Assembly (NCBI RefSeq): GCF_026571515.1
Contig: NW_026857436.1
Coordinates: 1-64,000, forward strand
Reading direction: 5' to 3'
DNA: 64,000 nucleotides
Source: Ruditapes philippinarum
Lineage: Eukaryota
The notes below the pieces were generated by a model that was given only the letters and a program-made list of their open reading frames with translations, made no database searches and was not told the origin of the DNA. The translations under genes were made by a program, and so were the position numbers. Position 1 is the stretch's first letter; each line of letters opens with the position of its first letter. Positions 1,479-63,449 of this stretch are shown here, piece after piece.

Positions 1479-4400
1479 ATGGGGAAATTTTTTGGTATTC
1501 GAAGCTTATGTCTGGTGTTTGAGAAAGGAATGTCATCGGATTTGAGGAATCTTTGTTATGAGGCAGAAAAGGATGTCAGCATGATAGAAGGAAAAATTCA
1601 TTTAGGACACAGGAAAAAGATAGAAACCAATTAAAAAATTGATTGATGATGTAGCTCATATGAGAGTATGTAAGCGAGAAGAGGTGAAGGAAGTGCTATC
1701 GATATTTAACGAATACGTAAAACCATTCTTGGAGGTATATATATTATACTATTTATGTGTTGAGTTAAACAAAGAGTTGCTAAATTGTTTCCAATTAGCC
1801 GGGGTTTTTTTATATATAACACAGGGTAGAAGAACTACAACTCCCGGCGTGGGTTTGTTTTGTATACAAAATGTATTTAAATAAAAGCCTAAAAACATAA
1901 ATACTTAAAAACTTTTTGTCACAGTTCTCATGTCACCGACTCTCAAATTCATATATCAAGTTAAACTGTATTAATTAATAAACACGCTGTTAATACATTA
2001 ACAATGAATTGTATATTGTCTGTTTTAAGGAGGAAGAAAGAAAAAAATCTGATATTGATAAAGGCTCAAAGAAAGATCCTGTTAACAAAGATGATGATAA
2101 CTTCAGTGGAACAAACGAGAATGAGAAACAAAAATTAGATAATAATACCCTACAAACAAAACATCTTCAGGATATGAACACGTAAGTTCAGATATTACAG
2201 TGATTATACGAATTATGCTCGTAATAAGCTTTGTGTGCCATATACTTAACGATACTGTAGGACCATTGTATTTTTTGAAAATTTTCAACAATATTGCGAG
2301 ACTATTCAAAAGATATACATGTAATATGTCTTACCCAAAATATATTCACGGAATTAAATTTGAAAATGTGTTTTTTCCAATATGACTTAAGAAAAGAAAA
2401 TGGCACTTAACATTCATTGTCATAGATTTTATTGTGTCAGAGAGATGCATCAGATATATATTTACATTATACATAGTTTGTATCTAAAACATAGTCATAA
2501 TTTTTTTTTCAAAAGGCTATCCCCCAACACCCTTTAAACAATTCTTGGATACGGTACAATATAACACATTTTTGCTGTTTAACTTCAGACCAATAAAAAG
2601 AGGAATAGAAGGACTTGTTGATGCATTTCGAGAGCTTTTCTTGAATGGTCATTGGAAAACACTTTTTGATGATATCTCGAAACACACAAATTCCCAGCAT
2701 CTGAGCACTGAATGCATTATGGAAATAGTAAAGGTAAAACATTTAAAAATATATATGAAAGATGTAAAAGAATCTTTATCTTGATTTTTTTACCGATGAC
2801 GAGTGGATTGGATTTTTCCAGGCTACGACCTTAAGAGGCGCGGCGGCACCATGTGTTACTTTTTTTTAAGTTTATATATCCAAATTATCTAATTAGAAAT
2901 GAACAAAATTTGCAATAGTTTATCTTATTCATCACTAATAATATTCGAACGTGTTAGGCTTTCATTGTATAAAAGGTCTGGATGTACAAGATAAAGAAAT
3001 ACAGATGACTCTTGCATATATTGTCCTTCTACTTATCGTATTTTAAACTGTTTAAAGTGACTGTTAAATTTCTATTCATTAAAAAGCAATTTACTTATAT
3101 TCAACAGAAAGCGTTTAAAATAAGTAAGATTGAGGCTGCCAATCAGATAAGTTTTGCCGGACAGTGTGCAAAACAGATAGTAGAGACTGGGGAGACTGGG
3201 GATGTACGTATACATACTCAGATTTATTTTTATACCTTCTTTTACTTTGCATTGTATTAAATCTGTGTAGTTAAAATCTAATGTTATTTGCCAGACAAAT
3301 ATTGGTGTGTTTATGAAGTATCATAGAAATCAGGAAAAAAAATGATATGAGCCGCGTCACGACAAAACCAACATAATGGGTTTGCGACCAGCATGGATCC
3401 AGACCAGCCTGCGCATCCGCGCAGTCTGATCAGGATCCATGCTGTTCGCTATCAGTTTCTCTACTTGTTATAGGACTTGTAAGCGAACAGCATGGATCCT
3501 GATCAGACTGCGCGGATGCGCAGGCTGGTCTGGATCCATGCTGGTCGCAAACCCACTATGTTGGTTTTGTCGTGACGCGGCTCAAATTGCTAAAGAGATG
3601 ATAAATGTGTAACACCTCTCACGCCTTTTAGTGGAGTTTATCTGTTAATATTTAAAACGTTTTGGATATTATATTCTAAAGGAAAAGTTATTCTAACTAA
3701 TCATATTCATGAAAAGTTTCGTGTAACATGCGGTTTTTTTATATCTGAAAATATTTGTGCAAAGTCCATTAATGAGTGTGTTCGAAATAATTAATTAATT
3801 GTCCTTTACTTTCTGAAGGTGTCTCCTGACAATATCCATTCTTCAAAGCATATGGAATCCTCGGACGAACTACTTCGTAGATATAGATATATACATGCAG
3901 ATATGTCAACAGAAAGGCTTCAAGGAGTAATGTTCATTTCCATATATTTTTTCATTTTTAATGAGTGTAATTTTAAACAGTGCGAAAAAAGTTTTGATCC
4001 AAAAGGAATTAATTTGTATTATTGTCTGCCAATGAACATATTGAAGGTAGAAAATTAATTTAAACAATATCCCTCATTAATTGTATGTGTGCCTTTAAAT
4101 TGTATTAAAAAGTCTAATTTTAAGAGCATACTCCAGTTCTAAAACTAACAAATACAGGCGTCGTATGAAAAAACGTGGTGGTAACCCTATAGGTGTCGAA
4201 TCCACAATCCCTGTACTGATAGGCTTACAAATTCACCACTACGCCACCGCTTTCCTTTAAATGGTTATTTTGATTTCCTTAATTTCGGCTTTTTAAATAT
4301 GTATTGTACGAAACGGTATTTCTTCAAACTTAAATGGTTTTAAAGAAAATCCATTTGATTGATTTAATTATCAAGACATTACCAGCTATCCTATTTTTAA

Positions 4401-4718
4401 CGCGTTATGACAATGCTTATATTCTCTTTATTTCAGCTTCTTTTACAAGAAGTGAAAACATTCCTTCTTGACACTTACAATATTAAGATGGATGGGAATA
4501 AAAACCTTGTATTGTTCACACGTGACTGTGCTGCCATAACATGGTTAATGTGTGTTGAGGACCCACCAATTGATATGGTATATGACAAATTTTCAGACAG
4601 AATGGACGAGAACAAATATGACATTATAAAAGGAAAACCATTTAAAAACATTGTGTGGCCTGCATTACAATTTGAAGGCGCTGGAAGCATGTTATCAAAA
4701 GGAGTAATATGGTGTTAA
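1479..4718 (+). CDS. Mieap (SPATA18)-like domain protein, paralog 1; six exons; one +1 frameshift in exon 1 (pseudogene or sequence error)
   Basis: Exons 1479-1734 (MGKFFGIRSLCLVFEKGMSSDLRNLCYEAEKD...IET/IKKLIDDV...VKPFLE, extra base near 1630), 2030-2181, 2589-2733 (AFRELFLNGHWKTLF), 3108-3203, 3819-3926 (LLRRYR) and 4437-4718 (CAAITWLMCVEDPP...IVWPALQFEGAGSMLSKGVI). All introns are GT-AG with phases 0,2,0,0,0. About 345 aa if corrected. Confidence 0.8.
3348..3584. mobile_element. Palindromic MITE, copy 1 (intron 4 of paralog 1)
   Basis: ~100 bp inverted arms (tgagccgcgtcacgacaaaaccaac...gttggttttgtcgtgacgcggctca) around a short spacer; six copies in the window. Confidence 0.9.
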
Positions 4719-6780: not shown

Positions 6781-7362
6781 GATTATGAGTGTCACGTGAC
6801 CTATTATGAGTTTGCGGCCCGGGCCGAGAACTAGTTATCAGCCCGCAGAACATGTACACGTGCACAAACTGAAACAATGACGTCATATTTTACGTCATCA
6901 AACAGTTAACTGTAAAATTGAAAGTAGGTTGTCAGCACGAATCGCTTTATTTTTATTATGAGAGCTTAAGCGTATTTTAGTACAAACACATTTTTTTGTT
7001 ACTATTGAAATTTGAAGAAATAATACGACAAATTTATTCCGAAAAAAATGAAAATAAAACTTGCTTCTAGATTCTACTGCTTGAACACACAAACAGTAAA
7101 CATCTCTGTACAGAACAGTAGAAGAGTAGACAAGAATGTCAACAAAAGAACTTTGTTTGTTTTTTTTTTCTTTTCTTTTTTTAAATGCTACTATTAGATC
7201 ATCCAAGTGTATTAAAGACATTAATACACGTCAGAGTAGGGCCGGAAGGTGATAATCGGCCCTAAATGAATAATGGCCTCGGGCTAAAGCCCTCGGGTCC
7301 ATTATTCATTTTGCGGGCCGATTATCACCTTCCGGCCCTCACCTGCCGTGTATTAACCTCTT
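6781..7362. mobile_element. Small non-autonomous element with a terminal ~140 bp hairpin
   Basis: Palindrome at 7220-7357 centred on ctcg-ggctaaagcc-ctcg and ending attaacctct. The left boundary is approximate. Confidence 0.55.
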
Positions 7363-11865: not shown

Positions 11866-11875
11866 CTGTATAAAA

Positions 11876-25138: not shown

Positions 25139-28100
25139 ATGATGGCAACAAGTATAACTCTGCAGTTACTGGACTATACGATAGACGGGTATTTTAGTAA
25201 GGCAAAAGCATTATGTGATGAAGCAACTGTGGAAATTAACACACTCAAAAGAAAATACGGTAAACATTTCACAGACTGTCAAACACACGCTATCGAAAAT
25301 GTTAGAAGAGTAATAAACCATTTGGTTACCAACCAGACAATGTCAGCTAAAGTAAATGCATTGTCAACAATTCCGAGGTTTTCTCAGCATATCGTCGAAA
25401 ACTATTTAAAGGTTAACATCTTTAGTTTTCATTTTGTTTTTGCTTCTGTTTTATTTTGTTCTTAACTTCATTGTCAGTATAGAAATATGGTGTGAAAAGA
25501 ATAAGCTTTGAACTTTTGTTTTTTTGTTGTTGTGCTTTATACGCGAACGTCATGTAAAATATGATGCATGGAGGTGTCATTTTAGCAATAAAGATACTTT
25601 TGGCAGGCAACTTGGTAAGCCATGTCGCAGTGAATTGAACCAACATTTAAATAGCTAATCATATTTCAAAATACTCGTGCACAATTTATATAAAAAAGAA
25701 CAAAGGTGAAAGCTGTTACTAAATAATCATGAAGTGAGCAGGTCTTTTTCAATGCAAATTACAAACCTGTAAGTTCTAATAGTATGTGATCTGTAAGAAT
25801 TTATTTTATTTGTTAAACGCAAAAGTAACTGGAAGAAACATTTAGGAAAATAAACAATTTGCTTAGGTTTCTAAATACATGTATAAAAGGGCAAACTTAT
25901 CAACATGAATGAAGGAACTGCGTAATATATTTTATAAACTAGCAATTACAGCTTAAAGATTTGTAAAAAAAAATCTCATTCAATTGAACTTTATTGAGGA
26001 GGCTGGAACATTCAAGGAAATGTGGCTTTATCGGTAAACTTGTACAAAATCATGCAGTTTTCAACATTACATATATTTTGGCACTTCCTTCTTCGAAAAG
26101 AAATTCATATAGTTTCATGTTTTGCTATCTACCGCTATGAAACATTGTTTGCATTGCTTTAAGTACTTTGTAATATTTCATTCCTATAAATGTATGTTAT
26201 AAATACTTTCAAAACAAAATAATTTGTGCTAAATACTTCAAATGCTATGCTTAAAAGATATTATGGCACACATATTTTAGTTGTAGGTAGTTAATTTAAT
26301 TGTGCAATCTGTCTTTAATATAAAGTACTAATTACCTTGGTACACTTAGACATATTCAAAGGCTCAAGTATATCATATGAAATGAACAGGTATAAATTAT
26401 TTCAGAGAAAGCCAATGAAGGAGGTTCATCCATCCGATCGAACTAGCGGCATTCAAAACCACTACATCGATGAGCAGAAAGGCGAAGATAGTCGACACTG
26501 TGAACAAAATATGGTTAGTGGTCGGCGCATGCATACGAAAAGACAGTCGGACGGACAACGAGCGGCAATTGGAGATAATAATCAGACAGAAACACATCAG
26601 ATCGGCACACATGAAGAATATCAAAAAAATCAAGCTTGGTAAACAAGTAAATAAATAACGAAATGTATTAATATTCACTTACAACATTTTAACACAATGT
26701 CTCTCATTCAATGTTCTTAAATAAGAATAGGTATGTATTTTCATAAAATTCTTTCATATTGAGTTTATACAAGTTTACTTTAGTTCGATTGTGTAGGAAC
26801 CATTAAGCTTATTGAAACACACTCAAATCAAACAGTACTAAGCAATGAGTGTAAAGGTTATTACTGACAGAAACAACGGTTTGTCCCTTGAATCTTTTGA
26901 ACCCACGCGGCCAGCAATCATTAAATTACTAGTCCAACACTTTAGACATTCGCAAATGCACCCACGTTCATTATTATCACACATTGGAAATAGAAAATTA
27001 TGAAAGAAATAATTTTTATCTCGATTTTAATATAACAATTGGTTTAAACAATGTATACATGTATATTTGGCTAAATAAGAGGGGTTGTAATAATTGTTTT
27101 AACTCTCAGTAAAAAGAGCAATCCATGCACTGAGGCTAAACAACCCTGACATTCCTGACCTGAGTGATACGAACAGACCAACCAAAATAGCTGAAAAATT
27201 TTCCGAGCTTTATGATAATGAGTGGACAGAGGCGTTTGAATCACTTTGTAAAACGGAAACGAGTTCGGAAAAAAGAAACATTGAAACCCTCCTTAACATT
27301 GTCCAGGTAACAACATATTCAGACTAATCTTAATTTCTTTTGATCGACTTTTCACTGTTGTCAAATGCTTAAATAGTGTTGATTTCATTTTAATGCAAAA
27401 AGACACAACAATGAAGTTCAAATTTTTTTTTTTTATATTTTGTTGTTGTTGTTCTTTATATAATATAATAAAAACTGATGCAGATAGCCCGAACCAAAGT
27501 AGGTATATAGGCACAAGACAATATGCAGATAGCCCGAACCAAAGTAAGTATATAGGCACAAGACAATATTTCATAACAGACAATTTAAGCCGTTCAACAC
27601 GTAACATTATTGTACTGATATAAAATCATGAAAGTATTGCTAAATACACGTCACCTTTATGTCCGTGTAATAGTAATCTTTATTTATTGATAAATTGAAA
27701 AAGGTGTAATATAAATTCATGTTTTAAGAGACGTAATATCGTATATGCTTCTACTTTAGGATGGGTATGAATTTTGCCGGGTAGAAGCAGATAGGCAAAT
27801 TGACAATCTACAATCAATTTGCATAAGATTTATTAAAGGAGAACAATTACCGTCATCCCGAGTAAGACCTTATTTTCTGTTGTTTGCTTTCAAATGAATT
27901 AATAATCAAGTGCGTTTCTTTGATTTTATTTGTTTTAATAATAAATGCCTTCGGAATAAAACACTTTGGCGAGCATCATATGTTATTATAGTAACAATTC
28001 GTCCGTTCTCATTTTACAAGATTATAAGTCAAATAATTAATTCATTGATATTCTTATTTTATTCTAGAAGTATACAGATCCGCCATATGATAAAGGTAGA

Positions 28101-29200: not shown

Positions 29201-29202
<2 letters not shown>

Positions 29203-41600: not shown

Positions 41601-44600
41601 GAAGCGATTGAGCTATCTTTGCCACTTACACATTTTCTCCCCTAAATAGTGAACAGTTCTAAACCATGACAGATATTTAGATTTTTAAATTAACAGATAA
41701 ATAATTCTTAATTAATAAATTAGAAAAAAAAAACTTACATACTCATATAGTCTTAATTAAGATAACAATTTATATACCATTGTATAATTATTTTTTACTA
41801 AAAAGGGCTTAGACAGTTATTGGTTGTGCCATTATTTATAACAGGTCAATTTGAAAGTGAACATAACTGTGCTAATTCATGTACAATATTTATTTTTTGT
41901 ACAGATAAAAAACTAACCTTTTTTCTATGATAAGAAATTTTATGAAGTCTGATTTGTATTTTGCATCAAGGCACCGGGCGAAAACATGAAAATTATGCAA
42001 CCAACGACAACCACTTCGTGGTCGATTGTATTTCATGTTTTCATCTGGCGCCTGGTTACTTTTGTACTTTGTTGGTTTTCATGTGGCACATTAAATCACC
42101 CACTATAAAATTTAGTGTACCAAATTTTATTCAAGGGCAAGTAACAGTCTACTCTATGAAAAGTATGTTGTCGGGTTGACTCAGGAGACCTGGAGATTGA
42201 GACCGGTGTCCCTCCATTACAAATAGATAAGGCAGAAGCTGTCCATTTCAAAACTATGCCACATGTTAAAAAAAAATAGAATGTAACTATTCAGAATATG
42301 ATTTGTTTTGAGACTTTATCAATTATATTGCTGGATCCAAGATTCAGGACATTTTCAATCAATAATGTATTATCATTTATAACTTTAAATGAAAGTCTCA
42401 TCCCTTTAATAATAATGACATAACTCAGAGTAACTCTTTAAATTCAGAAATAATTTATAAATCTCATCATATCAATATACTAAGATATACATGTATGCAC
42501 ATAACATTAATAATTCCCAGTTTCTATTAAATAAATATGAAATCCTACCATTAACATTGGTACTAATGGATGGAATTCAAAATCTAGTAGAAAAGAAAAC
42601 TAATAATATATAAACTCTGTTATAGATACTATTATTAGCCAGCTAACACTTGGTATAAACAAATTTAACCTGTAGACTGATCATGTATTATCATTTATAA
42701 ATTTTAAATGCAAGTCTCATCCATCATAACTGTAAGTCTTTAAATACAGAAATACACATTATATCCATATACTATGATACACTTGTATGAACATTACATA
42801 AATAATTCTCAGGTTCCATTAAAAATAAATATAACATCCTATTAACATTGGTGTTTGGGGGGAATTCATAAATCTTGTAGAAAGAAAACTATAATGTACA
42901 TGATATTGTATAGTATAAAAGTAAAAAAAATCTCAATAAAATCATATAATAAAGATTAAGTTGTGTGAGTTTCTAAACATTAAATGCATATCTCTTACAG
43001 TAACAAATACTGTCCCTCATTAGACTTTACTACAAAACTAACTGTAACTATATATATCAAGTGTTTAAAATGAGCACCATATGTTACATAATAATAGCTT
43101 AAATATTATTATCTACCTTTTCATTTTTACCAAAGGTTATTTTATGAGCAATTTACATACAAACACATAGAAAATAATAATTTCACATATTGATTAGAAT
43201 ATTCCTCTAGCAGAAATACCTATAGTATATGTGCTAACTGAACAAACTAGAAAAATCTGGTCTAATTAAGGTATATAAAGCCAGTAAAAAATATATATAT
43301 CAATATTTACTCATCATGGCCTTTATGCTTTTGATTACCTTACAACTGGTAAATTTTATTAAACAAAAAATAGTAAGTAATACCTAACTTGTAGGGATTA
43401 AACGATGATCAAGTATAATCGATAATTGATCGTTTATAGGACCGATTAGCGATGATCGAATACAAAGTTCAATAATCGATCATCGGTTATTTATCTTCTT
43501 GCTCTTACTTAAGTGACTCGCTGTATTATAACAACACTTTAAATTAAAGCCAGCTTTGGTGTACCCAATAACTTTCATTAAAATGAATGAGAAAGCATAC
43601 TGGTGACCATGAGATTAATAGTTGACAGTGAGGCATTCTGTAGTTTAAAAGACATACTATGCTCAAATTTAAAATTTAGAAAATGTCTACACAGTCTATT
43701 TGTAAATATATGAAATAAACATGTTTGACTTCAAACAAAGAAGATATGTATAAAATTATTCTACACACTGAAGATGGTAACAATATCAATATATGGTGTC
43801 ATTAAAAAAACCTGGAATTTTTGTTAATGACCAACTTCTCTTGTTCTCATACATAGCTTATTCATTCCTTTATTGGAATTGAGACATAATAATTTCATAG
43901 ATATAATGAATTTATTTGATTAAAATATTTTACTCAAGGATGAACATAAGCATGAGTAACTAGTTTATTTTAATCTTAAGTGGTAGTTACACATATATAT
44001 AGATTATTAATGGAATTCTTATAAAATATTAAAGCATGATATGTGCATTGTACATATTTACTTTGTTATCGTAAATGTTTCGATTATATAATCGATGATT
44101 GGTCGATTATTTTCAATGATCGATTATGATTTTTTTCCAATTAAGAAACCCTATACCTAAAATAGACAGAAAAGAACAAATAATTTAGTAAACATGAGTT
44201 ACTTCCCCTTAAAATAGAGAAAACCTAAAAAAAAAAACCAGAAGAACACCCCAAACATCAAAATTAAGAAATGTTGCAGGCTCAGTTTTATTAAGCCATG
44301 CAAATTCATGGTAAAGTATTCATAAAAAAATAGATGGCCATGTGACAGCAGTTTTTGCAGAAAATCTGATAGCTTTCAACATCCGGATACTGGTACACCT
44401 TGTAAAAACAACCATTCTGTGCAACAGATAAACGTAATATATAAAATTAATAGGATAATCGTTTATAACAGTCCATTACCTATCCTTATACTAATTGGCA
44501 GGTGAAATTTCTTCTTGTAGGAAAATTTTGAAAAAATATATATAAACGAATGGATATGGACACGACATCAATGTAGACCACAACGATATTCGAAATCCGG

Positions 44601-45557
44601 GTTTTAGTATTTCAAACAAATACAGTGTGTCGAAAGGATGTGCGGAATTGTGTAAATATATCACGCTGATATTTCGCGTGTTGATAAAAATACTGTTTAG
44701 ATTCTACAAATGTATATGATTTGAAAGGAAAATGTTTCTATGTTACTTTTCACGGAAATGGGCTGTACAATGATTGCGTATTTAAAGCCAATAAAATGTC
44801 GGCTGTAGAAATCGAAAGGAATTTTGTCACGTGACTTTTGCCCATGCTACCGAAAACTACCCATCACAATATCACGGCGTTGAGACGCCGTGAAATAATT
44901 AGAGTATTTATCATAAACAACCACAGACAAGTTTTTTGTTGTTTAAACAAGAGTGATATAATTTTGAAATGTTCATACACAAACGTTTAGTTAATTTGAT
45001 ATAAACCTTATCTTTGTTTTAATAAGATCAACTGTTTGTTATTATTGTACTTCAATAATGGTAATACTTCTACTATAAATGCAGTCAAAAAATGACTTTT
45101 GTGTTTGTAAAATACTCTCAACCTTGTCAATGTTTTAGACTATTTGATATTTTTCAATAAATAGTAAATTTGTAGCTGAAATATTAACTTCGTATATGCT
45201 TTTCAAAACGTTTTGTTTCTAAATTTCATCTTGTATACATGTATTTAATTACAGAACTTTCTCGAAAGCAATTTGGGTGGTTTGTTAAAGAAATACGGTA
45301 TAGATCCGAGGAAAATCAACACACAACTTGAAGAGTATGCAATGAAATGTGTCGAAGTGACGTGGTATCTTTGTGCCGAGGATCCTCCTGTATGTATGGT
45401 ATTGGTATTAGATGAAGGAACACAACAGTTTGACGAAACTCTTTACGAACCCAGTACAAAGAGGGGTGCCATGATAGATTATGTTCTTTGGCCAGCTCTT
45501 AAACATTCTGAAAATGGGTCCGTGTTAGCCAAAGGAAACGTCGAGTGCAAAAATTAA
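29673..45557 (+). CDS. Mieap-like domain protein, paralog 4; six exons over 15.9 kb, exon 4 garbled
   Basis: Exons 29673-29951, 33439-33491, 33742-33892 (HFKEIFDNPWAEAHDAL), ~34604-34708 (unreadable frame in a homopolymer-noisy region), 35793-35897 (EEIRAYRK) and 45255-45557 (CVEVTWYLCAEDPP...YVLWPAL...KGNV). Readable junctions match the phases of the other paralogs. Confidence 0.75.
31960..32460 (+). mobile_element. Old CR1-like LINE ORF2 3' remnant
   Basis: Broken LESIQ..AARIVTG-like segment at ~32176-32220 and YNLRN at ~32374; many stops. Confidence 0.45.
32659..32720. repeat. (CCTT)n/(CATT)n microsatellite
   Basis: Directly visible. Confidence 0.9.
33124..33346. mobile_element. Palindromic MITE, copy 2 (intron 1 of paralog 4)
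   Basis: Same family as 3348-3584, with a small internal deletion. Confidence 0.9.
36447..40370 (+). mobile_element. Pearl/Helentron-like (HINE) tandem-repeat element(s), outer
   Basis: ~140-160 bp repeats (ttatgctccggacaaaaattaagtatgaaaaataacaaagggcaataact), a (GGAC/AGAC)n microsatellite at 40280-40330 and a terminal short hairpin (atcccc...gggata). A second noisy terminus lies at ~37220-37310. Confidence 0.7.
38248..39865 (+). mobile_element. Pearl/Helentron-like element nested in the outer one, with ~10 tandem ~145-bp units
   Basis: Starts aacaagcagggccatgatggcc; unit gagtgttaacaaggtttttctatttttagctccggtgacctag...gaccaagtttgatgatgattg; (GGAC/GACGA)n at 39772-39812; ends agctcaccctgagccatgctcagtgagct plus an A-run. 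Confidence 0.85.
40960..41345 (-). mobile_element. Degenerate LINE RT fragment
   Basis: Minus strand reads FQSGFRSGF, MILLDLQKAFDTVDH and GVP..ILGPLLCLIYVNDM. Confidence 0.75.
43392..44153. mobile_element. Possible hAT-like non-autonomous element
   Basis: TAGGG...CCCTA ends with subterminal aatcgat/cgatta repeats at both sides; no clean 8-bp TSD. Confidence 0.4.
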
Positions 45558-46199: not shown

Positions 46200-46704
46200 T
46201 CATGATTATTCCCATACTTACTAAAATATCTACATCTGTATTCAATGACCAACATACGCCGTTCAGAATAATATCCTAGTAAGATTTTGGTTTATGGACA
46301 AGACCGTAAAACAAATTATATAAAAGACACATTTTCTTATTATGGTATGAACATTTGGAACAATATACCTTTAAATATTCGTAATGTTGATAACCTTAAA
46401 TGTTTTAAAAGAAAAATGCAAAAAAGCAAAACNNNNNNNNNNNNNNNNNNNNNNNNNNNNNNNNNNNNNNNNNNNNNNNNNNNNNNNNNNNNNNNNNNNN
46501 NNNNNNNNNNNNNNNNNNNNNNNNNNNNNNNNNNNNNNNNNNNNNNNNNNNNNNNNNNNNNNNNNNNNNNNNNNNNNNNTTTTTTTACCTATGCATATTG
46601 TTGTTGTTGTTTTTTCTATTCAGAAGGCCACATTGAAAATAAGATATATATACATTGTAATTGCTATTGTATATTCTTAATGTGTAACCTACTTTAAATA
46701 AAGA

Positions 46705-47184: not shown

Positions 47185-50177
47185 ATGGAAAGTAAGACAA
47201 GAACGGAGCTATTACTAACGATGCTGATGGAAAATCGGACGACAGAGGCTAGGCGACTAATGGGCCATACAGAATATGAGCTAAGCATGTTGCCGTCAAA
47301 TTTAAATCGCGCTCAAAAAAGTGTTGTGAAAGAAATAAATGAAATAATTGCGCGTTTAAACGAAGGATATGACGGCTCGGCTATCACAAAGGCGAAACCA
47401 GCCCTAGCGAAATTCATAGAGTACCGATTGAACGGGTTCATTAAGGTAAAATACTTCTACGTATAAGTCATACTTAGGATCTTGTTTTACGACGAAAATT
47501 ATTTTTGAAGGTTTCATTTGATATTTCTATTTTTGAATATTGCTACTTTCCACAAATACCTTATACTGAACCTGAATAATAGGTAACTGTTAAGATATAT
47601 ACATGTACATGCGAGAATATGATATTCATTATAAATGTTTCATAGTACAAATGGTTGAATTATTCAATGACTAAACTTTTTTTCAAGTCAGCGTTTAGTC
47701 ATGCTAAAAAGGATAATGACTCCATGCTAGATTTCGTTTCTAAACTCTTGTTTAAATTATGTAATGAAAGTTATGACACCAATTTTTGTTATAATTTCAG
47801 AGTTTTCTATACAAGGATTTCTCGAGATACTATGATCCATTATCAGGGCAAGGTGATTCTTATGTGGATATCCCAACACAAACAACGACGCGTCGAAGAG
47901 TTCAAGGGTGGCAAAACATCATGTCCGACTTTTCTCAAAAGAAAGCAAGCAGAAGAGAAACGAAGGATTTATGGACAATAGACGGTATTCTCGAAGCAGG
48001 AGAGGACGCTGACCTGGAATGGGAAAGGTTAACGAAGAATATAATTGTATTGAAAAAAAATTGATTAAAAAAATAAATTATAATAGTACGTATTTCTGTT
48101 ACGAATTTCGATGAAAAATACATGTATTTTAAATTTCTAAAGTTTGGTATATGCTATTTAAGCTATGACCACCCTAATAGGAAAATAAAAGGAATGTAAA
48201 TGAGGGCCCATTCACTTAGTTTACTAAGGAACTATTAAACCATTCAATTTATAGATAAGAGGTATAAAGCTGGCGTAAAAGACAATTTATAATTGACAAA
48301 TAGTACAAACATATGAGCCGCGTCAGGACAAAACCAACATAATGGGTTTGCGACCAGCATGGATCCAGATCAGCCTGCGCATCCGCGCAGTCTGATCAGG
48401 ATTCATGCCGTTCGCTATCAGTTTCTCTACTTGTAATAGAGTTGGTAAGCGAACATCATGGATCCTGATCAGACTGCGCGGATGCGCAGGCTGATCTGGA
48501 TGCATGCTGGTCGCAAACGCACTATGTTGGTTTTGTCATGACGCGGCTCATATATATTTTTCAGGTTTAAGTTACACGAAGATAAAGATAAAAAGGAAAG
48601 TAGGGATTTTAATACCCCTACGTATATCGCACAAACATTTACAGACCTGTATCATAATGAGTGGACTGAAGCCTTTAGAAAACTAAGCAAAAGAAAAATA
48701 TACGATAGGACAATTATTGAATTGCTTTTGGCAATAGTGCAGGTATTTTTGCTTTCTATCTATAGTTAAAGAGTAAATTGAATTCATATACCCTAAAGTC
48801 CCGTAACATCTGAGCGCAAAGTGAATATAAGATAATTACTGGGAACAAGTTATTTATACTGATTAAGTTTCAACCGTGTAATTCTTATAATTTTGTTGAT
48901 TAACAAAATAATCGTAACGTTTGCTTTTGTATTTCTTATCCAATTAAAAATAAGAGCTATTATTAATCGTATACGTGTTCATCTGTGAAGATGATACTGA
49001 ATTCAAAACAAACTATAAAAGTTTTAGGAACGAAAAAGGTGGTTATGTTAGGTTCTAATTTAAACGTTTAAGTTTATGTTTCAATATATAATCTTACAAG
49101 ATGATTTTTTATTCTAAATACTTTTTATATAAATGCATGGTATTCACGTGTTTCAGGGAGCATATGCATTTTGTAAAAAAGAAGCAACACGGCAACTACA
49201 AGATATACATTCAGCGTTCCTAGATATCCTTGAGTTTGGTTCACGTACTGATCATGTAAGTCCTATTTCATGTAAACATATACTAGTTGTTGCTTAATAT
49301 TTGAATGCCTCTGAATACTTACCCTTAAATAGTTCTTAGTAACGTTAGATAAACTAAAAGGATGTTCGTTTTTCCTTATCAATATTTTTGTTATCCCTAA
49401 CTATTTATTTAATGTAAGAAGTAAAGCACACAGATTATATTTGTTTCAGTATAGGGAAACGTCTGCAGACTCAAGTTTGCTAACAAAATACCGAAAGGAT
49501 ATGGCAGCCACAGCTTTGCCTAAGCTAATCAAGGTAATCATTCGCAATAACTAGATTAACCCCTATTTTTATAGTAAACAGATACACAATAAAAACTACA
49601 GCAATCATGAAATTCGTACTCCTTTAATATTTTGCATAGACGGTCCTTCCTATGAAAAGTAAGATGTATGGTACATATTCTTAATAACAGAGATATCAAA
49701 CTATCTTTCAATCTATAATTAAGTTACTAGTATATTTGTTGATTTTTCTATTCGTATTTTGATATGCAAACATGCACCTTAAATTCGTACAAATGTTTAA
49801 TATTATAGACATGAAAAAAATAAACGTGTTATAAGGAAACTAAAGGAACAACATAATCATTATGTAATATATGATACTTTTAGGAATTTTACGAGAAGTC
49901 TTTTAAAGAAATATGTGTAGCTTCGCTAGGTGTTGAACCTGAGAAAGATGGTATAGGTTCGTCATTCGCAAGAAAAGCTGTTGAAGTGACATGGTGGATG
50001 TGTGTTCAAGACCCTCCGGTCTATATGGTTCCTACTAGTAAAGAGGGATTCGATCCAAAACTCTACAATGCGTACAGTAAAACATCATCAAATCAGCTGT
50101 TATACTTTGTGTGGCCTGCATTACGTTTTTCTCTTAACGGTGAAATTTTACAGAAGGGTTTCGTACAATATAGATGA
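47185..50177 (+). CDS. Mieap-like domain protein, paralog 5; intact, six exons, ~380 aa
   Basis: Exons 47185-47445, 47801-48027, 48565-48742 (PTYIAQTFTDLYHNEWTEAFRKL), 49157-49255 (GAYAFCK), 49450-49533 (LLTKYRK) and 49884-50177 (AVEVTWWMCVQDPP...YFVWPAL...KGFV). Total 1143 nt in an open frame. Confidence 0.9.
48314..48550. mobile_element. Palindromic MITE, copy 3 (intron 2 of paralog 5)
   Basis: Same family; ends 14 bp before exon 3. Confidence 0.9.
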
Positions 50178-56005: not shown

Positions 56006-59000
56006 ATGGACCTAACAAGAGGTAAACTGGAAACGCTGTTTGATTTCTTGCGTTATAGGCAGTATGACGATGTACATAAGATTCTCGATGATGCCTCGGA
56101 CGAATACAGGCAGCTATTTAGAGAATTGAATAGGGAAGAGAAAAGGAAAGTAAATTATGTTATGTCGATGATAGATTATTGTCGAACTGGCAAATGGATT
56201 CTGGCAGGGAATCAACTAGGTCCTGCTGAAGAAGAATACTATAAATATTTCTACAGAAAGCGTTCATCCTATAGAGAAGTGAGTAAAATTGTTCGCCTTA
56301 GTTAATTAGTTTTTTAGTTTTATAATTTTTGTATTATCATTGTGTATAACGATATAAAACGTAAAAAAAAAGAAAAATTGAGCCGTGTCACGACAAAACC
56401 AACATAATGGGTTTGCGACCAGCATGGATCCAGACCAGCCTGCACATCCGCGCAGTCTGATCAGGATCCATGCTGTCCGCTTACCAACTCTATTACAAGT
56501 AGAGAAACTGATAGCGAACAGCATGGATCCTGTTCAGACTGCGCGGATGCGCAGGCTGGTCTGGATCCATGCTGGTCGCAAACCCATTATGGTGGTTTTG
56601 TCGTGACACGGCTCAATTAAATTCTTAATGAATCTTTGTCGACATAGTAAAATCATAGTTACATTTTTTTGTAGCAATCGTTCAAAACGCTTAAGTTCAA
56701 TCTTCAGCCCAATGAAAGGAAGGGCAGTAGCCAGTTTAATAAAAGCAATAGCACGATAAGACCTGTGTCAGAAACATATCCACGCGGATGGAAGGGAGAT
56801 AGCAAGTTTGATAAAAACAAGATCACGTCAAGACCGGCGTCAGAAACATATGCACAGAGAAAAGATATGGCGTTGGGGTCAAATTTATTGTGAGATTTTT
56901 TTTTAAACATTTCACTTTTCAAGAATGTGTATTTCATTTACTTTTAGATGGTTTCATGTATATCTATGTATTCATTCTATTACCTTGTATCTTATTTACT
57001 TCCCATAATAACTCAAAAGTAGTTTCATGTGCATATATGTGCACATGTGTTTTTTATTTACTTCAGATATCAACTGTAAGATTGTTTCGAGAATATCATG
57101 AAAATACATATAAAATACATATGAGCCGTGTCATGACAAAACCAACATAATGGGTTTGCGACCAGCATGTATCCAGACTGGTCTCGATCCATGCTGGTCG
57201 CAAACCCATTATGTTGGTTTTTTCGTGACGCGGCTCATATTTATTTACGTAAATTTATTTACTTCAGATATAACGATAGTTTCAAATACATGTATATTTA
57301 TATACAAACATGTATTTCTTTAACGTGAGATATAAACAGTGAGATAGGTCAACGTTTTGATGCAAACATGTGCTTTATTAACTTGATATATAAATAATAC
57401 GATATGCTCATGTCTATTAATGCTCACATATGTATTTTATTTACTGTAAGAAAGTTTCATGTGAATTGTATTTATTTCAACATAGAGATCGGCTTATATA
57501 TACATTGTATTTGTGCACAAATGTGTATTTCATGTATCTCAGATATCACTAATTAGACAGTTTCATATCTATTCACATATAGTTTCATATCTATTCACAT
57601 ATATTTTCATATCTATTCACATATAGTTTCATATCTATTCACATATAGTTTCATATCTATTCACATATAGTTTCATATCTATTCACATATAGTTTCATAT
57701 CCATTCACATATAGTTTCATATCCATTCACATATAGTTTCATATCTATTCACATATAGTTTCATATCTATTCACATATAGTTTCATATCCATTCACAAAT
57801 AGTTTCATATCTATTCACATATAGTTTCATATCTATTCACATATAGTTTCATATCTATTCAAATATAGTTTCATACCTATTCACCTATTTTCAAATCTAT
57901 TCACATATAGTTTCATATCTATTCACATATAGTTTCATATCTATTCACATATAGTTTCATATCTATTCACATATAGTTTCATATCCATTCACATATAGTT
58001 TCATATCTATTCACATATAGTTTCATATCTATTCACATATAGTTTCATATCTATTCACATATATTTCATATCCATTCACATATAGTTTCATATCCATGCA
58101 CATATAGTTTCATATCCATTCACATATAGTTTCATATCCATTCACATATAGTTTCATATCTATTCACATATATTTCATATCCATTCACATATATTTCATA
58201 TCTATTCACATATATTTCATATCCATTCACATATAGTTTCATATCCATTCACATATAGTTTCATATCTATTCACATATATTTTCATATCCATTCACATAT
58301 AGTTTCATATCTATTCACATATAGTTTCATATCTATTCACATATAGTTTCATATCTATTCACATATAGTTTCATATCTATTCACATATATTTTCATATCC
58401 ATTCACATATATTTCATATCCATTCACATATAGTTTCATATCCATTCACATATAGTTTCATATCCATTCACATATAGTTTCATATCTATTCACATATAGT
58501 TTCATATCTATTCACATATAGTTTTCATATCTATTCACATATAGTTTCATATCTATTCACATATAGTTTCATATCTATTCACATATATTTTCATATCCAT
58601 TCACATATATTTCATATATATTCACATATAGTTTCATATCTATTCACATATATTTCATATCCATTCACATATAGTTTCATATCCATTCACATATATTTCA
58701 TATCTTTTCACATATAGTTTCATATCTATTCACATATAGTTTCATATCTATTCACACATAGTTTCATATCCATTCAGATATAGTTTCATATCTATTCACA
58801 TATAGTTTCATATCTATTCACATATAGTTTCAAATCTATTCACATATAGTTTCATATCCATTCACATATAGTTTCATATCCATTCACATATAGTTTCATA
58901 TCCATTCACATATAGTTTCATATCCATTCACATATAGTTTCATATCTATTCACATATAGTTTCATATCTTTTCACATATAGTTTCATATCTATTTACATA

Positions 59001-62000
59001 TAGTTTCATATCTATTCACATATAGTTTCATATCTATTCATATATATTTTCATATCTATTCACATATAGTTTCATAACTATTCACATATATTTCATATCC
59101 ATTCACATATAGTTTCATATCAATTCACATATATTTTCATATCCATTCACATATATTTCATATCTATTCACATATAGTTTCATATCTATTCACATATAGT
59201 TTCATATCTATTCACACATAGTTTCATATCTATTCATATATATTTTCATATCTATTCACATATAGTTTCATAACTATTCACATATATTTCATATCCATTC
59301 ACATATAGTTTCATATCCATTCACATATAGTTTCATATCCATTCACATATATTTCATATCTATTCACATATAGTTTCATATCCATTCACATATAGTTTCA
59401 TATCCATTCACGTATAGTTTCATATCTATTCACATATAGTTTCATATCCATTCACATATAGTTTCATATCTATTCATATATAGTTTCATATCCATTCACA
59501 TATAGTTGCATATCTATTCACATATAGTTTCATATCCATTCACATATAGTTTCATATCCATTCACATATAGTTTCATATCCGTTCACATATAGTTTCATA
59601 TCTATTCATATATAGTTTCATATCTATTCACATAAAGTTTCATATCCATTCACATATAGGTTCATATCTATTCACATATAGTTTCATATCTATTCACATA
59701 TAGTTTCATATCCATTCACATATAGTTTCATATCCATTCACATATAGTTTCATATCCATTCACATACAGTTTCATATCTATTCACATATAGTTTCATATC
59801 TATTCTCATACAGTTTCATATCTATTCACATATAGTTTCATATCTATTCACATATAGTTTCATATCTATTCACATATAGTTTCATATCTATTCACATATA
59901 TTTCATATCTATTCACATATAGTTTCATATCTATTCACATATAGTTTCATATCTATTCACATATAGTTTCATATCTATTCACATATAGTTTCATATCTAT
60001 TCACATATATTTCATATCTATTCACATATAATTTCATATCTATTCACATATAGTTTCATATCTATTCACATATAGTTTCATATCTATTCACATATAGTTT
60101 CATATCCATTCACATATAGTTTCATATCTATTCACATATAGTTTCATATCCATTCACATATAGTTTCATATCCATTCACATATAGTTTCATATCTATTCA
60201 CATATAGTTTCATATCCATTCACATATAGTTTCATATCTATTCACATATAGTTTCATATCTATTCACATATAGTTTCATATCTATTCACATATAGTTTCA
60301 TATCTATTCACATATAGTTTCATATCCATTCACGTATGAACATTTCCTTACTTGATATATAAATAGTAAGATAGGTTCATGTTTGTTTATATTATTTACT
60401 GCAGATATCAACAGTACGATAGTTTCATCATAACATGTATTTGTTTACTCCATATATAAATAGTATGATAGATGTATGTATATTGATGCACACGTGTGTA
60501 TTTTATAAACTTCAGACATAAACAGTAAATGCTTCAACAGACGGAAGGATTTTGAAGTACAACACCAATTAAAACTAAGATTTTAAAGCAAATTTTAATG
60601 TGTGAAGGCAACTATTTCTTGAATTCGTAAACCTTAAGTCTAGATGTAGGAGTAGAACATGTTTTATTTTGAAAATCTTGTCCTACAGATTTTTACAGAC
60701 CTCCCACAATGACAAGTAACAGATTACCAAATCTCCTGATAATGGGTGTAATGAATGAAATTACAGAACAATTAGGGCTAAAAGGTAAACATAGTAGAAA
60801 GATGGGGTAAAATAATGTTGGAAAACTCTTCAGGAGACCCAAAGTTGTGGTATGTTCGAATCTCAAATTATTCCGAAAATGAGTATGTCATGGTATTGAA
60901 CTGTTCTCTAATCAGGGGAGGTAGTTTATAGGCGGCCGGATAGCTCAGTCAGTAGAACCGCAGTGCGGTATTCCGAGGGTCCCAGGTTTGAGTCTCGGTC
61001 AGGCTGCACATTAAAAATTAATAATTTAAAAAAAGTGGAGGTGTTTCAATCATTACTCATGGGGAAAAATATTTAGTGAGTAAAGTAAGTAAGGGATCAA
61101 TTGGGAGGGAACTTTTTTTAGGGAAACCTTATTTGATTCCTACAATGCAGAGTTAGAAAATTGTACATCTTATCTGTAATTAGTGTTGTACAACAAAATC
61201 CTACCGTCTGTTGAGGCCTTAAGATGCTTTTAGGTTCAGGTATATTTAAGCACACGTGGGTATTTTATTAACTTCATATATAAACAGTAAGATTTATGTA
61301 GGTTCATGTACATTTGTATATTTATGCGCACGTGTGTAGGTAGTTTTATAACCTCAGATATAAACAGTAAGATGAATGTAGCTCATGTATATATTTATGC
61401 ACACGAGGGTATTTTATTAACTTCATAAATAAACAATTTGATGCATGTAGGTTCATGTATATTTATGCACACGTGTGTAGGTAGTTTTATAACTTCAGAT
61501 ATAAACGGAAAATGCCAATGAGGAAGCGTCATGTGACAGATCTAAGGGATCTCAGTGACATACAAAAAATTGCTGGAAAGTTGGAGGAAATATATCACAA
61601 CGAATGGGCAGATGCTCTTGATGAATTGGAACACTTTAAGATAGATGAGTTTAACTCTATTAAGTGTCTTCTTAAGATACTGTTGGTAAGTTGGTAAATG
61701 TAATTATTGTTGTTGTTGCTTCTGCTACATTTGCTCCTCCACCTTTTTCTTTTTTCTCTCCTTCATCTAGCCGTTGTGACTGTTTACTCAATAATTGTAA
61801 TTTTTGATGGTATTTTTTGTGTCATTATCAATTTTTGCATTGTTGAAATATTGTTTTTTATTCTCAATGAATCGTTAGGTCTAATTGATACATAGCTACA
61901 ATCATGCTTATCTTTTTTAATAAATGAAATAAACATATTTTTAAACATATCCTTATGATTAGATGCGATAACTAAGAGAAAACTCTACTTCTATGGAAGT

Positions 62001-63449
62001 CCATCGACACCCTTTGTCCGCCCTATTTGCTTTCGGTTTATTCGTATTGTATTGCATTACTTTACATAAACACATGTCATGATAACAATCCATTAATATT
62101 TTTTCAGGATGCATACTATATATCAGTCGTTGAGGCGGACACGCAAATAACAAAGTTGGAAGATGCTGCAAGCAAAATACTTTTGGAGGGAGCCTATGCA
62201 ACGGTTATTACATACAAATTCACAGATTATGACATGTTGACTGAATTATAACATGTATTCAGGCGAACATTTTTATTTGTCTTTAAATCTGCAAACTTGA
62301 ATTTGTAAAACTTTTCAAAGCCTACAGTAAGTAAAGAGTTGTTAAGAAATTGCATAATCTTTAACCCACCTATCCGTTTGGTAAATCTATTCATAACATA
62401 TTCGATATACTCGTTTCACTCTTCGGTCTCATCTCAGTTCTGTTTAAATGTATATGCCTAGACCTACAGCCAGGCCTAGACCTATAGCCATGCCTAGACC
62501 TATAGCCATGCCTAGACCTATAGCCATCAATAGCAGCTAGCGTCATGTTCCTTTATTCAAATGATATACAATGCATTAAGTTGTGATCTACACATTTTGA
62601 TATACATTTTAGTCGTATGGTGAAGAGCTAAAAGATCAAAGGTCGTTATTGGTGAGATACAGAATGAGGATCGCAAATATATGCGTAGATCGGTTGCAAG
62701 AAGTGAGGACTTTTATCATTATATTCTACTCGCATGTATTTTAGATAACTTATCAATCGGATATTCTTATTTGATTTTCATATTCTACTTGTATATACTT
62801 TAGATTGGTTAAATCAATCGAACATTTTCACTAGATTCGTTATTCTTACTCGATTCTTAAATCAAACATTAGGTTTTAGCAGTAAATATTTGTATAATTT
62901 GAGTCGCGCCATGACAAAACCAACATAATGGGTTTGCGACCAGCATGGATCCAGACCAGCCTGCGCATCTGCGCAGTCTGATCAGGATCCATGCCGTTCG
63001 CTATCAGTTCCTCTACTTGTTAAAGGGTTTGTAAGCGGACAGCATAAATCCTGATCAGACTGCGCAGATGCGCAGGCTGATCTGGATCCATGCTGGTCGC
63101 AAACCCATTACGTTGGTTTTGTCATGACGCGGCTCATTTGATTTTTCAGACGTTCAGACGTCGTTATCTACCAGAGATCATCCGCACAGTAGGAGTATAC
63201 CAAAACCTTCCCATACAAGGACCTGTTCATACATACGCCAGTCAGTGTGTGGCTATCAGCTGGGCAATGGCTGTACAATATCCACAGGCATATCTTGCAG
63301 ACGACAGGGATAGGCAAAGACTCTTCAATAGAGAGTTTTATGACACATACACGAGATCTGGCCAATCTGTTGATTTCTTTGTCTGGCCGCCATTGTTAAC
63401 TCATAAAAACGGAAAACTGGTTTCTAAGGGAATTGCACAAGGACTGTAA
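56006..63449 (+). CDS. Mieap-like domain protein, paralog 6; intact, six exons, ~386 aa
   Basis: Exons 56006-56278, 56675-56889, 61499-61685 (DLSDIQKIAGKLEEIYHNEWADALDEL), 62108-62203, 62613-62702 (LLVRYR) and 63150-63449 (CVAISWAMAVQYP...FFVWPPL...GKLVSKGIA). Total 1161 nt in an open frame. The exon 2 donor is slightly uncertain. Confidence 0.88.
56379..56615. mobile_element. Palindromic MITE, copy 4 (intron 1 of paralog 6)
   Basis: Same family. Confidence 0.9.
57122..57237. mobile_element. Palindromic MITE, copy 5, centrally deleted (intron 2 of paralog 6)
   Basis: Both outer arms are retained and the centre is missing. Confidence 0.85.
57559..60333. repeat. 22-bp minisatellite (AGTTTCATATC[T/C]ATTCACATAT)n, ~125 copies
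   Basis: Directly visible tandem array in intron 2 of paralog 6. Confidence 0.98.
60931..61010 (+). mobile_element. tRNA-like SINE head / tRNA pseudogene
   Basis: tagctcagtcagtaga A box and ggtttgagtc B box; imperfect stems. Confidence 0.55.
62456..62527. repeat. 18-bp tandem repeat x4 (gcctagacctatagccat)
   Basis: Directly visible. Confidence 0.85.
62900..63136. mobile_element. Palindromic MITE, copy 6 (intron 5 of paralog 6)
   Basis: Same family; ends 13 bp before exon 6. Confidence 0.9.

What the first reader, a model, noticed from the sequence alone, without database searches (positions are those of the whole stretch)
1479..63449. Tandem cluster of six diverged Mieap-domain genes with a shared modular six-exon design
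Seen: six co-oriented genes with the same exon plan (N-terminal helical exon, low-complexity linker exon, four core exons; phases 0-2-0-0-0). Only scattered core motifs are conserved between most copies. Established: the exon 3 and exon 6 motifs match the C-terminal region of Mieap/SPATA18, which is single-copy in vertebrates, is a p53-induced mitochondrial quality-control protein, and has a long coiled coil. Inference: this is a lineage-expanded subfamily with no long coiled coil and a variable N-terminal module. Tandem expansion, high divergence, recent duplication and gene decay together are the birth-and-death pattern typical of invertebrate immune or stress gene families. This is the best candidate in the window for an undescribed system. 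Its function cannot be read from sequence.
Basis: partly seen in the sequence, partly recalled or inferred. Interest (0 to 1): 0.9.

Follow-up and report, generated by a model that had tools for sequence, protein, structure and literature searches.

The report
Clam array of Mieap-domain genes
This stretch of Manila clam DNA holds a real row of fast-diverging genes that all end in the 'mitochondria-eating protein' (MIEAP) domain; this family is already known to be hugely expanded in bivalves, and its function is still unknown.

Summary
The window is Ruditapes philippinarum contig C5923. It carries six co-oriented last exons that pass Pfam MIEAP (PF16026), and six homologous first exons.

Status of the six genes:
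- Gene 2: RNA contigs from two studies confirm six exons, five GT..AG introns and phases 0-2-0-0-0.
- Gene 5: the RefSeq protein gives the same plan.
- Gene 1: same plan from exon 2 on, but exon 1 is frame-broken by homopolymer indels.
- Gene 3: one extra base at the start of exon 3.
- Gene 6: my own model fits the plan.
- Gene 4: only exons 1, 3 and 6 are detectable.

The N gap (46433-46579) lies between genes 4 and 5 and touches no exon. The linkage of genes 1-4 to genes 5-6 therefore rests on scaffolding.

Exons 3-6 encode one complete MIEAP domain. Exon 1 folds as a generic four-helix bundle and exon 2 is disordered.

The array is not an undescribed system. Regan et al. 2021 already report the bivalve Mieap expansion (807 genes, about 53 per species). 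RefSeq annotates at least four of these genes as uncharacterized LOCs. This genome has at least 150 such exons. The scan also noted a similar array elsewhere in this genome.

Function remains inferred: a modular adaptor with a conserved MIEAP anchor and a fast-evolving N-terminal bundle (dN/dS about 1).

The MIEAP domain has no solved fold relative. A weak GrpE resemblance failed the sequence tests.

The parts
1479..4718 (+). Gene 1 (RefSeq LOC132749740, protein P0008). Exons: E1 1479-1734 (frame-broken), E2 2030-2181, E3 2589-2733, E4 3108-3203, E5 3819-3926, E6 4437-4715 plus stop.
   Evidence: P0008 maps to exon 1 (from the Met at 1660) and to exons 2, 3, 4 and 6; exon 5 rests on its residues 157-185 and the exon HMM. 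Exon 1 is split over two frames near 1625. It has four homopolymer indels relative to the intact copy on C8149. Its MIEAP hit is E 2.7e-9.
17387..21210 (+). Gene 2 (LOC132749741, protein P0151, 360 aa). Exons: E1 from 17387 or earlier to 17749 (ATG at 17480), E2 18627-18790, E3 19533-19725, E4 20101-20202, E5 20388-20477, E6 20752-21012 plus stop, 3' UTR to at least 21210.
   Evidence: Spliced RNA contigs from runs X1 and X8 show five GT..AG joints. The phases are 0-2-0-0-0. P0151 matches exons 1, 3 and 5 at 100% over their full length; the exon 2 and 6 HSPs run past the splice sites, and exon 4 matches from 20101 in a 71% HSP that overruns the acceptor (its close relative P0007).
25142..28706 (+). 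Gene 3 (LOC132749745, protein P0164, 318 aa), a recent duplicate of gene 2. My model: 25142-25411, 26478-26638, 27117-27306, 27760-27861, 28068-28157, 28443-28703 plus stop.
   Evidence: Per-exon identity to gene 2 is 71-92% and dS is 0.18. There is one extra base after the conserved exon 3 acceptor. The RefSeq model uses other exon 1 and exon 2 donors. No RNA was laid on this gene.
29673..33892 (+). Gene 4, 5' part. Exons: E1 29673-29951 and E3 33742-33892. Exon 2 was not found.
   Evidence: The exon-1 HMM gives E 4e-6 and the exon-3 HMM gives E 3.6e-6. Splice phases fit: phase 0 donor, phase 2 acceptor, phase 0 donor. No exon 2 candidate was found.
44521..44553 (+). An exon-3-like remnant (an 11-residue motif ending in NEW), 0.7 kb upstream of the gene 4 last exon.
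   Evidence: tblastn and HMM hits are weak: E 0.002 and 0.06 in restricted searches. There are stops just upstream. It raises the possibility that 'gene 4' is two partial genes.
45255..45557 (+). Gene 4 last exon (E6) plus stop. It lies 11.4 kb from exon 3, across a repeat-rich block.
   Evidence: PF16026 gives 35.8 bits and the exon-6 HMM gives 87 bits. No exon 4 or 5 was detected between 33.9 and 45.25 kb.
46433..46579 (.). Assembly gap (N run) between gene 4 and gene 5.
   Evidence: locates it. No family HMM hit lies on either flank. The ORFs listed across it are artefacts of N read as X. It was not filled.
47185..50177 (+). Gene 5 (LOC132749744, protein P0155, 380 aa). Exons: 47185-47445, 47801-48027, 48565-48742, 49157-49255, 49450-49533, 49884-50174 plus stop.
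   Evidence: P0155 maps at 96-100% on exons 1, 2, 3, 5 and 6; exon 4 was not recovered by tblastn and is placed from the exon-4 HMM (49160-49243) and the RefSeq protein sequence. The model is 1143 nt, all sites are AG/GT, and the phases are 0-2-0-0-0. MIEAP E 7.3e-16.
56006..63449 (+). Gene 6 (my model). Exons: 56006-56278, candidate E2 56675-56889, 61499-61685, 62108-62203, 62613-62702, 63150-63446 plus stop. Intron 2 holds a 22-bp satellite.
   Evidence: Exon HMM hits are E1 0.01, E3 1.5e-13, E4 0.001, E5 0.05 and E6 7.6e-26. No RNA or database protein confirms this model.

Best explanation
This is one stretch of a larger tandem array of bivalve-specific MIEAP-domain paralogs in the Manila clam.

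What each intact gene encodes. Each encodes a cytosolic protein of about 350-380 aa made of three modules: an N-terminal four-helix bundle (exon 1), a very hydrophilic disordered linker (exon 2), and one complete MIEAP domain (exons 3-6).

How the array evolves. It grows and decays by local duplication, divergence, transposon insertion and loss. I hold this part at about 0.95.

How the proteins most likely work. This part is inferred, and I hold it at about 0.3. In vertebrate Mieap the structured C-terminal region concentrates the protein in cardiolipin/phospholipid-rich mitochondrial condensates, and the hydrophilic N-terminal half engages clients. By analogy, the conserved MIEAP domain of the clam proteins would be a common anchor, to a membrane lipid or to a shared partner. 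The fast-evolving N-terminal bundle and linker would give each paralog a different client or regulation.
For: Shown:
- Six PF16026 last exons and a full-length domain in the RefSeq products.
- Spliced transcripts of gene 2 in two studies.
- An AlphaFold model with mean pLDDT 86: helices 5-89, disordered 92-129, and a helical domain with a small C-terminal sheet at 135-360.
- Linkers with GRAVY -1.0 to -2.0.
- dN/dS between genes 2 and 3 of 1.03 in exon 1, 0.86 in the linker and 0.50 in the MIEAP exons.
- In a tree of 57 last exons, genes 1-5 fall in one clade with copies on C8149, C3186 and C340 (SH-aLRT 87).
- C8149 carries six more such exons and a 90% nucleotide copy of gene 1. C3186 carries an 87% nucleotide copy of gene 2.

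From the literature:
- The role of the Mieap C-terminal region comes from PMC10845071.
- The bivalve expansion comes from PMC8382680.
- Gill enrichment of the Pfam family in a mussel comes from PMC5549309.
Against: - No experiment on any bivalve member was found.
- The clam MIEAP domains are not hydrophobic (GRAVY -0.4 to -0.7), unlike the description of the vertebrate C-terminal half.
- They lack the coiled coils and the basic disordered clusters of vertebrate Mieap.
- No lipid-binding fold relative was found. The best match is Z 6.2 at rmsd 11 A.
- The two raw-read RNA runs showed almost no reads on gene 2 exons.
Confidence: 0.55

Rival explanations
1. The family is an intracellular immune or stress effector family under diversifying selection, and paralog diversity matches a diversity of pathogens or insults.
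For: - dN/dS is about 1 in the N-terminal exon.
- There are hundreds of copies, and no close ortholog even in Mercenaria, where the best hit is 44% identical.
- Diverged parallel copies could reflect presence-absence or haplotype variation.
- The Pfam family is enriched in mussel gill.
- A MIEAP protein changes in abundance under cadmium in Dreissena.
Against: - There is no signal peptide and no recognisable immune, death-fold or TIR domain.
- A dN/dS of 1 can equally mean relaxed constraint.
- No challenge expression data were examined.
- This reading is compatible with the best explanation rather than exclusive of it.
Confidence: 0.25
2. Most copies are drifting duplicates with little individual function. 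The array would be neutral birth-and-death turnover around a few working genes.
For: - Gene 1 exon 1 is frame-broken.
- Gene 4 lacks detectable exons 2, 4 and 5.
- Gene 3 has a shifted exon 3 start.
- Overall dN/dS between genes 2 and 3 is 0.69.
- Transposons and a satellite sit inside introns.
Against: - Four genes keep open exons and AG/GT sites.
- Gene 2 is spliced and present in runs of 10 studies.
- dN/dS in the MIEAP exons is 0.28-0.50.
- The gene 1 breaks are all homopolymer lengths and may be assembly errors.
Confidence: 0.15
3. The C-terminal head of the MIEAP domain is GrpE-like. The family would then act as nucleotide-exchange co-chaperones for the HSPA12-type Hsp70s that are co-expanded in bivalves.
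For: - GrpE is the top hit of both aligners for both models: Foldseek E 0.09-0.16, VIA Z 6.2 with 138 of 156 residues aligned.
- hhalign picks the same FD..(H/Y) motif.
- HSP70 and Mieap are the two large ancestral bivalve expansions.
- Another unchecked scan note raises the same idea.
Against: - All scores are below the noise marks: rmsd 11 A and TM 0.2-0.33.
- hhalign probability is 2.3% over 18 columns.
- GrpE is not among the 25 Pfam families listed as most often matched by the 62 members scanned.
- Contigs with HSP70 hits do not overlap contigs with MIEAP hits.
Confidence: 0.06

Closest known systems
Vertebrate Mieap / SPATA18 (Pfam PF16026)
   Same: It shares the same C-terminal domain over its full length, above Pfam's cut-off. 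It also shares the overall plan of a hydrophilic or disordered N-terminal part followed by a structured MIEAP part.
   Different: The clam proteins have no long coiled coil. They have a 90-aa four-helix bundle instead. They are about 360 aa, and there are hundreds of copies rather than one. The last exons of the window genes group apart from the best-scoring, canonical-like copies on C6225 and C6085.
Bivalve Mieap orthogroup expansion (OG24 of Regan et al. 2021, PMC8382680)
   Same: The domain is the same, the family is restricted to bivalves and has a large copy number. Homologs occur in Mercenaria, Mya, Mactra, Dreissena, Saccostrea, Mytilus, Potamilus, Sinanodonta and Pinctada.
   Different: The paper reports counts and duplications only. 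It gives no gene structure, domain architecture or array anatomy. Many members elsewhere carry long coiled coils and are named myosin-, golgin- or girdin-like. This subfamily does not.
GrpE nucleotide-exchange factor (PF01025)
   Same: GrpE also has long helices followed by a small C-terminal sheet, and it is the top though weak structural hit. The two share an FD..(H/Y) motif.
   Different: There is no significant profile similarity, and the rmsd is high. The clam has its own ordinary mitochondrial GrpE on C1647.

Membership tests
Pfam MIEAP (PF16026) | A match to the family profile above the curated cut-off (27 bits) over the whole domain | tested here: met
   P0151 scores 58 bits over positions 1-194, P0155 59.2 bits and P0008 37.8 bits. 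All six last exons pass on their own, at 28.6-43.7 bits.
Pfam MIEAP (PF16026) | The conserved core motifs: the N-part motif ending in NEW, and the DPP, WPAL and KG motifs of the last exon | tested here: met
   W, P and G are invariant, and the D-L-S-D, N-R-P, E-L-Y-D-N, W-T and Q..PP positions are nearly invariant, in 56-62 family members. The six window copies share W, P, Y, WP, L, G and KG.
Canonical Mieap/SPATA18 ortholog | Long N-terminal coiled coils and several disordered regions with basic clusters, in a protein of about 500 aa or more | tested here: not met
   The model shows a 90-aa four-helix bundle and one 38-aa disordered stretch. Linker net charge is -4 to +1.
Canonical Mieap/SPATA18 ortholog | Single-copy orthology | tested here: not met
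   There are at least 150 exon hits in the genome. The best-scoring copies on C6225 and C6085 branch apart from the window genes.
Canonical Mieap/SPATA18 ortholog | p53 induction, mitochondrial condensates, and cardiolipin or phosphatidic acid association | not testable with these tools
   These features are known only from vertebrate cell work (PMC10845071).
GrpE (PF01025) | A profile match, or significant profile-profile similarity | tested here: not met
   GrpE is not among the 25 families listed for the 62 members scanned at E up to 10. hhalign probability is 2.3%.
GrpE (PF01025) | A shared fold | tested here: inconclusive
   GrpE is the top hit, but at Z 6.2, rmsd 11 A and Foldseek E 0.09. 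This is below the tool's own noise marks.

The most novel reading that the evidence does not exclude
The MIEAP domain ends in a GrpE-like head, and the bivalve MIEAP expansion supplies paralog-specific nucleotide-exchange or adaptor co-chaperones for the equally expanded HSPA12-type Hsp70s. The variable four-helix bundle would direct each pair to different clients.
Probability: 0.06. Interest if true: 0.8.

Novelty: new member of a known kind. Interest (0 to 1): 0.35.

Why it matters
MIEAP-domain genes are among the largest bivalve-specific expansions. There are about 53 per species in the published count, and a few hundred exon hits in this clam. No member has a tested function, and the domain has no solved structure or recognisable fold.

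This array offers a compact, transcribed, RNA-verified example. It has a clear modular plan: a variable four-helix bundle, a disordered linker, and a conserved MIEAP domain split over four phase-0 exons. It could guide constructs for localisation, lipid-binding and partner screens. As a discovery it adds anatomy, not a new system.

Tried and rejected
- Homodimer prediction of the gene 2 protein gave no answer (score 0.07). It is not evidence either way.
- Fold searches of the whole model found only generic four-helix bundles for residues 1-95 (Z 8-10: BRIL, PsbQ, talin).
- Fold searches of the MIEAP part alone found nothing above noise.
- A PDB sequence profile search found nothing.
- An Atlas search with the N-terminal 92 residues gave no usable feature hit and only generic helical structure matches.
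- The GrpE lead failed the Pfam, hhalign and contig co-occurrence tests.
- Exon 2, 4 and 5 of gene 4 were not found by HMM, tblastn or splice-aware scans. The splice scan also missed the true exon 2 of gene 3, so this negative is weak.
- The second homolog search, with P0155, did not return RefSeq proteins for genes 4 and 6.
- Spliced full-length models of genes 3, 4 and 6 were not joined or searched as such. All searches used single exons by reference, or database proteins equal to RefSeq models.
- The N gap was not filled or looked up in other copies.
Full report
**Where the window comes from.** The window is G000:C5923:1-64000, from a 1.41-Gb assembly in 15,874 contigs with about 32% G+C. 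Exact look-ups name the source. Proteins identical to the translated exons of the window are RefSeq entries of Ruditapes philippinarum, the Manila clam. They sit on a 65,331-bp contig:
- LOC132749740 (P0008, 285 aa) is gene 1.
- LOC132749741 (P0151, 360 aa) is gene 2.
- LOC132749745 (P0164, 318 aa) is gene 3.
- LOC132749744 (P0155, 380 aa) is gene 5.

All four are named 'uncharacterized protein'.

**The assembly gap.** The only N run is 46433-46579. It lies 876 bp after the gene 4 stop codon (45555-45557) and 606 bp before the gene 5 ATG (47185). No family HMM hit lies on either flank. The ORFs that the ORF listing draws across it exist only because N is read as X. No coding model depends on the gap. 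The adjacency of genes 1-4 to genes 5-6, however, rests on the scaffold join.

**The observation: six genes.** A six-frame PF16026 search of the genome finds six hits in the window. All are on the + strand and above the cut-off, at 4500-4709, 20779-21003, 28449-28694, 45300-45542, 49959-50168 and 63222-63437. I built exon-wise HMMs from 56 family members. They find six homologous first exons, six third exons and six last exons. They find fourth and fifth exons in five genes.

**Gene 2 is verified by RNA.** Contigs of two runs from different studies carry five GT..AG joints. These define exons 17387-17749, 18627-18790, 19533-19725, 20101-20202, 20388-20477 and 20752 onward. Counted from the ATG at 17480, the coding lengths are 270, 164, 193, 102, 90 and 261 nt. 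That gives phases 0-2-0-0-0 and 360 codons, exactly the RefSeq protein. Twenty runs from ten studies hold 14-21% of the sampled words of this 3.7-kb stretch, about what exons alone would give. Two raw-read RNA runs had almost no reads on the exons, so expression is not high everywhere.

**The other five genes.**
- Gene 5: the RefSeq protein maps at 96-100% (exon 4 placed from the exon HMM and the protein sequence, not by tblastn). The model is 1143 nt, all sites are AG/GT and the phases are the same.
- Gene 1: the plan holds from exon 2 on. Exon 1 differs from its intact paralog on C8149 by four indels, all in homopolymer runs. It has a stop in every frame before the donor. This is either real decay or an assembly error. 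RefSeq starts the protein at an internal Met.
- Gene 3: it is a close copy of gene 2. It has one extra base just after the conserved exon 3 acceptor. An acceptor 7 nt downstream (27117) keeps the 0-2-0-0-0 plan. RefSeq instead uses other exon 1 and exon 2 donors. No RNA was laid on it.
- Gene 6: I derived a complete model with the same phases, including a candidate hydrophilic exon 2 at 56675-56889. It is unconfirmed.
- Gene 4: this is the weak one. Exons 1, 3 and 6 are intact and in the right phases. No exon 2, 4 or 5 is detectable. Exon 6 lies 11.4 kb from exon 3, across a repeat block. A second exon-3-like remnant sits at 44521-44553. 'Gene 4' may therefore be two partial genes.

Searches used single exons by reference or the RefSeq proteins.

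**What the proteins are.** Exons 3-6 together are one complete MIEAP domain: profile positions 1-194 of 195, E 1.7e-15 for gene 2 and 7.3e-16 for gene 5. An AlphaFold model of the gene 2 protein, built with 56 homologs, has mean pLDDT 86. It shows:
- a four-helix bundle at residues 5-89;
- a disordered stretch at 92-129;
- a helical domain ending in a small sheet at 135-360.

The linkers have GRAVY -1.0 to -2.0. No other Pfam domain is present. By eye there is no signal peptide or transmembrane helix.

The N-terminal bundle matches only generic four-helix bundles (Z 8-10). The Atlas search gave only generic helical matches for it.

The MIEAP part was modelled alone through the natural partial protein P0007 (pLDDT 84). 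It has no solved relative by sequence or by fold. The best hit is GrpE at Z 6.2, rmsd 11 A and Foldseek E 0.09, all below the tools' noise marks.

**How the array evolves.** Outside the gene 2/3 pair, paralogs share 17-38% identity in exon 1 and 25-47% in exon 6. I computed Nei-Gojobori estimates exon by exon:

| Comparison | dS | dN/dS |
|---|---|---|
| Gene 2 vs gene 3, exon 1 | 0.15 | 1.03 |
| Gene 2 vs gene 3, linker exon | 0.29 | 0.86 |
| Gene 2 vs gene 3, MIEAP exons | 0.17 | 0.50 |
| Gene 2 vs gene 3, all exons | 0.18 | 0.69 |
| Gene 2 vs copy on C3186 | 0.08 | 0.28 |
| Gene 1 vs copy on C8149 | 0.066 | 0.45 |

The parallel copies align to the window at 87-91% nucleotide identity through introns. 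The C8149 copy lacks the 8.4-kb insertion at 5657-14083. I cannot tell whether they are very diverged haplotigs or a segmental duplicate.

C8149 carries six MIEAP last exons of its own, upstream of its gene 1 copy. The array is therefore larger than the window shows.

I built a quick maximum-likelihood tree of 57 last-exon peptides. It used only loci I had fetched and hits covering at least 55 profile columns; 96 columns were kept, so many forks are unresolved. Genes 1-5 fall with the C8149, C3186 and C340 copies in one clade (SH-aLRT 87, with an inner group at 95). Gene 6 falls elsewhere on a long branch. The two best-scoring, canonical-like copies (C6225, C6085) branch apart.

The closest full-length relative in another venerid clam, Mercenaria, is only 44% identical. 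There is no one-to-one conserved ortholog.

**What is already known.** Regan et al. 2021 (PMC8382680) list a Mieap orthogroup of 807 genes. It averages 53.1 per bivalve against 0.6 in other animals, with three duplications in the bivalve ancestor. Gerdol et al. 2017 (PMC5549309) found the Pfam family over-represented among gill-enriched genes of a mussel. A Dreissena proteomics study saw a MIEAP protein change under cadmium.

In this genome the profile search scored 150 of 202 candidate exons, and the gene 2 protein raised 384 candidates. A profile of the six last exons finds 1414 representatives of 50%-identity clusters. Every named hit is from a bivalve. The scan itself noted another such array in this genome. 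The claim of an undescribed system therefore does not hold at the family level. What is not in the papers I could search is the gene anatomy and the architecture of four-helix bundle, linker and MIEAP domain.

**Mechanism.** Nothing here measures function. The best-supported inference borrows from vertebrate Mieap. There the structured C-terminal region concentrates the protein in cardiolipin-rich mitochondrial condensates, and the hydrophilic N-terminal half deals with client enzymes (PMC10845071). The clam proteins keep the same order of a hydrophilic or disordered part followed by the MIEAP domain, but with a short bundle instead of coiled coils. The selection pattern shows a constrained MIEAP domain and an unconstrained N-terminus. 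This fits a common anchor with paralog-specific heads. I put this at about 0.3. Points against it: the clam domain is not hydrophobic, and no lipid-binding fold was recognised.

The GrpE idea came up independently in my fold searches and in an unchecked scan note, so I tested it:
- GrpE (PF01025) is not among the 25 families listed for the 62 members scanned.
- hhalign against 33 animal GrpE proteins gave probability 2.3% over 18 columns, around an FD..(H/Y) motif.
- Contigs with HSP70 hits do not overlap contigs with MIEAP hits.

It stays a long shot. A homodimer prediction gave no answer.

**Verdict.** This is a real, transcribed tandem array of a known, bivalve-expanded domain family. It has a neat conserved exon plan and clear signs of turnover. 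One member is damaged in this assembly and one is incomplete. It is ordinary for a bivalve genome, but the family's function is a genuine open question.

Noticed in passing
window 18908-19041 (intron 2 of gene 2): A short element with very high depth in RNA contigs (about 450 and 340, against 5-50 on the exons) and many loose ends in raw reads. It is probably a SINE- or MITE-like repeat transcribed from many loci.
   Followed up: no
window 3332-3587, 33110-33351, 48309-48559, 56379-56626, 62894-63144: A palindromic element of about 250 bp (it matches in both orientations, at 83-93% identity) sits in introns of genes 1, 4, 5 and 6. In gene 5 it ends about 5 bp before the exon 3 acceptor. In gene 6 it ends about 5 bp before the exon 6 acceptor.
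   Followed up: partly
window 5657-14083: This 8.4-kb block has inverted, low-complexity arms and an internal reverse-transcriptase fragment (RVT_1 at 11050-11862). It is absent from the parallel copy on C8149, which jumps from 5656 to 14084. It is therefore an insertion specific to this copy.
   Followed up: partly
window 51877-54327: A Ty3-like retrotransposon pol region between genes 5 and 6. It has RNase H and integrase domains on the + strand and is broken into several frames.
   Followed up: partly
window 57559-60337 and 61236-61506: A 22-bp satellite of 127 copies sits inside intron 2 of gene 6. Just upstream of exon 3 there is a 70-80-bp repeat that includes the exon 3 acceptor sequence.
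   Followed up: no
G000:C8149:60000-113988 and G000:C3186:1-12631: A parallel array. C8149 has six MIEAP last exons and an intact copy of gene 1 (P0153, 348 aa). C3186 has copies of genes 2 and 3. Nucleotide identity to the window is 81-91% through introns. Whether these are haplotigs or paralogs is undecided.
   Followed up: partly
G000:C6225:104566-108284 and G000:C6085:134573-138651: These are the two best PF16026 hits in the genome (90.9 and 69.8 bits). One exon covers profile positions 97-195, which is a different exon plan. They are probably the canonical Mieap-like genes.
   Followed up: no
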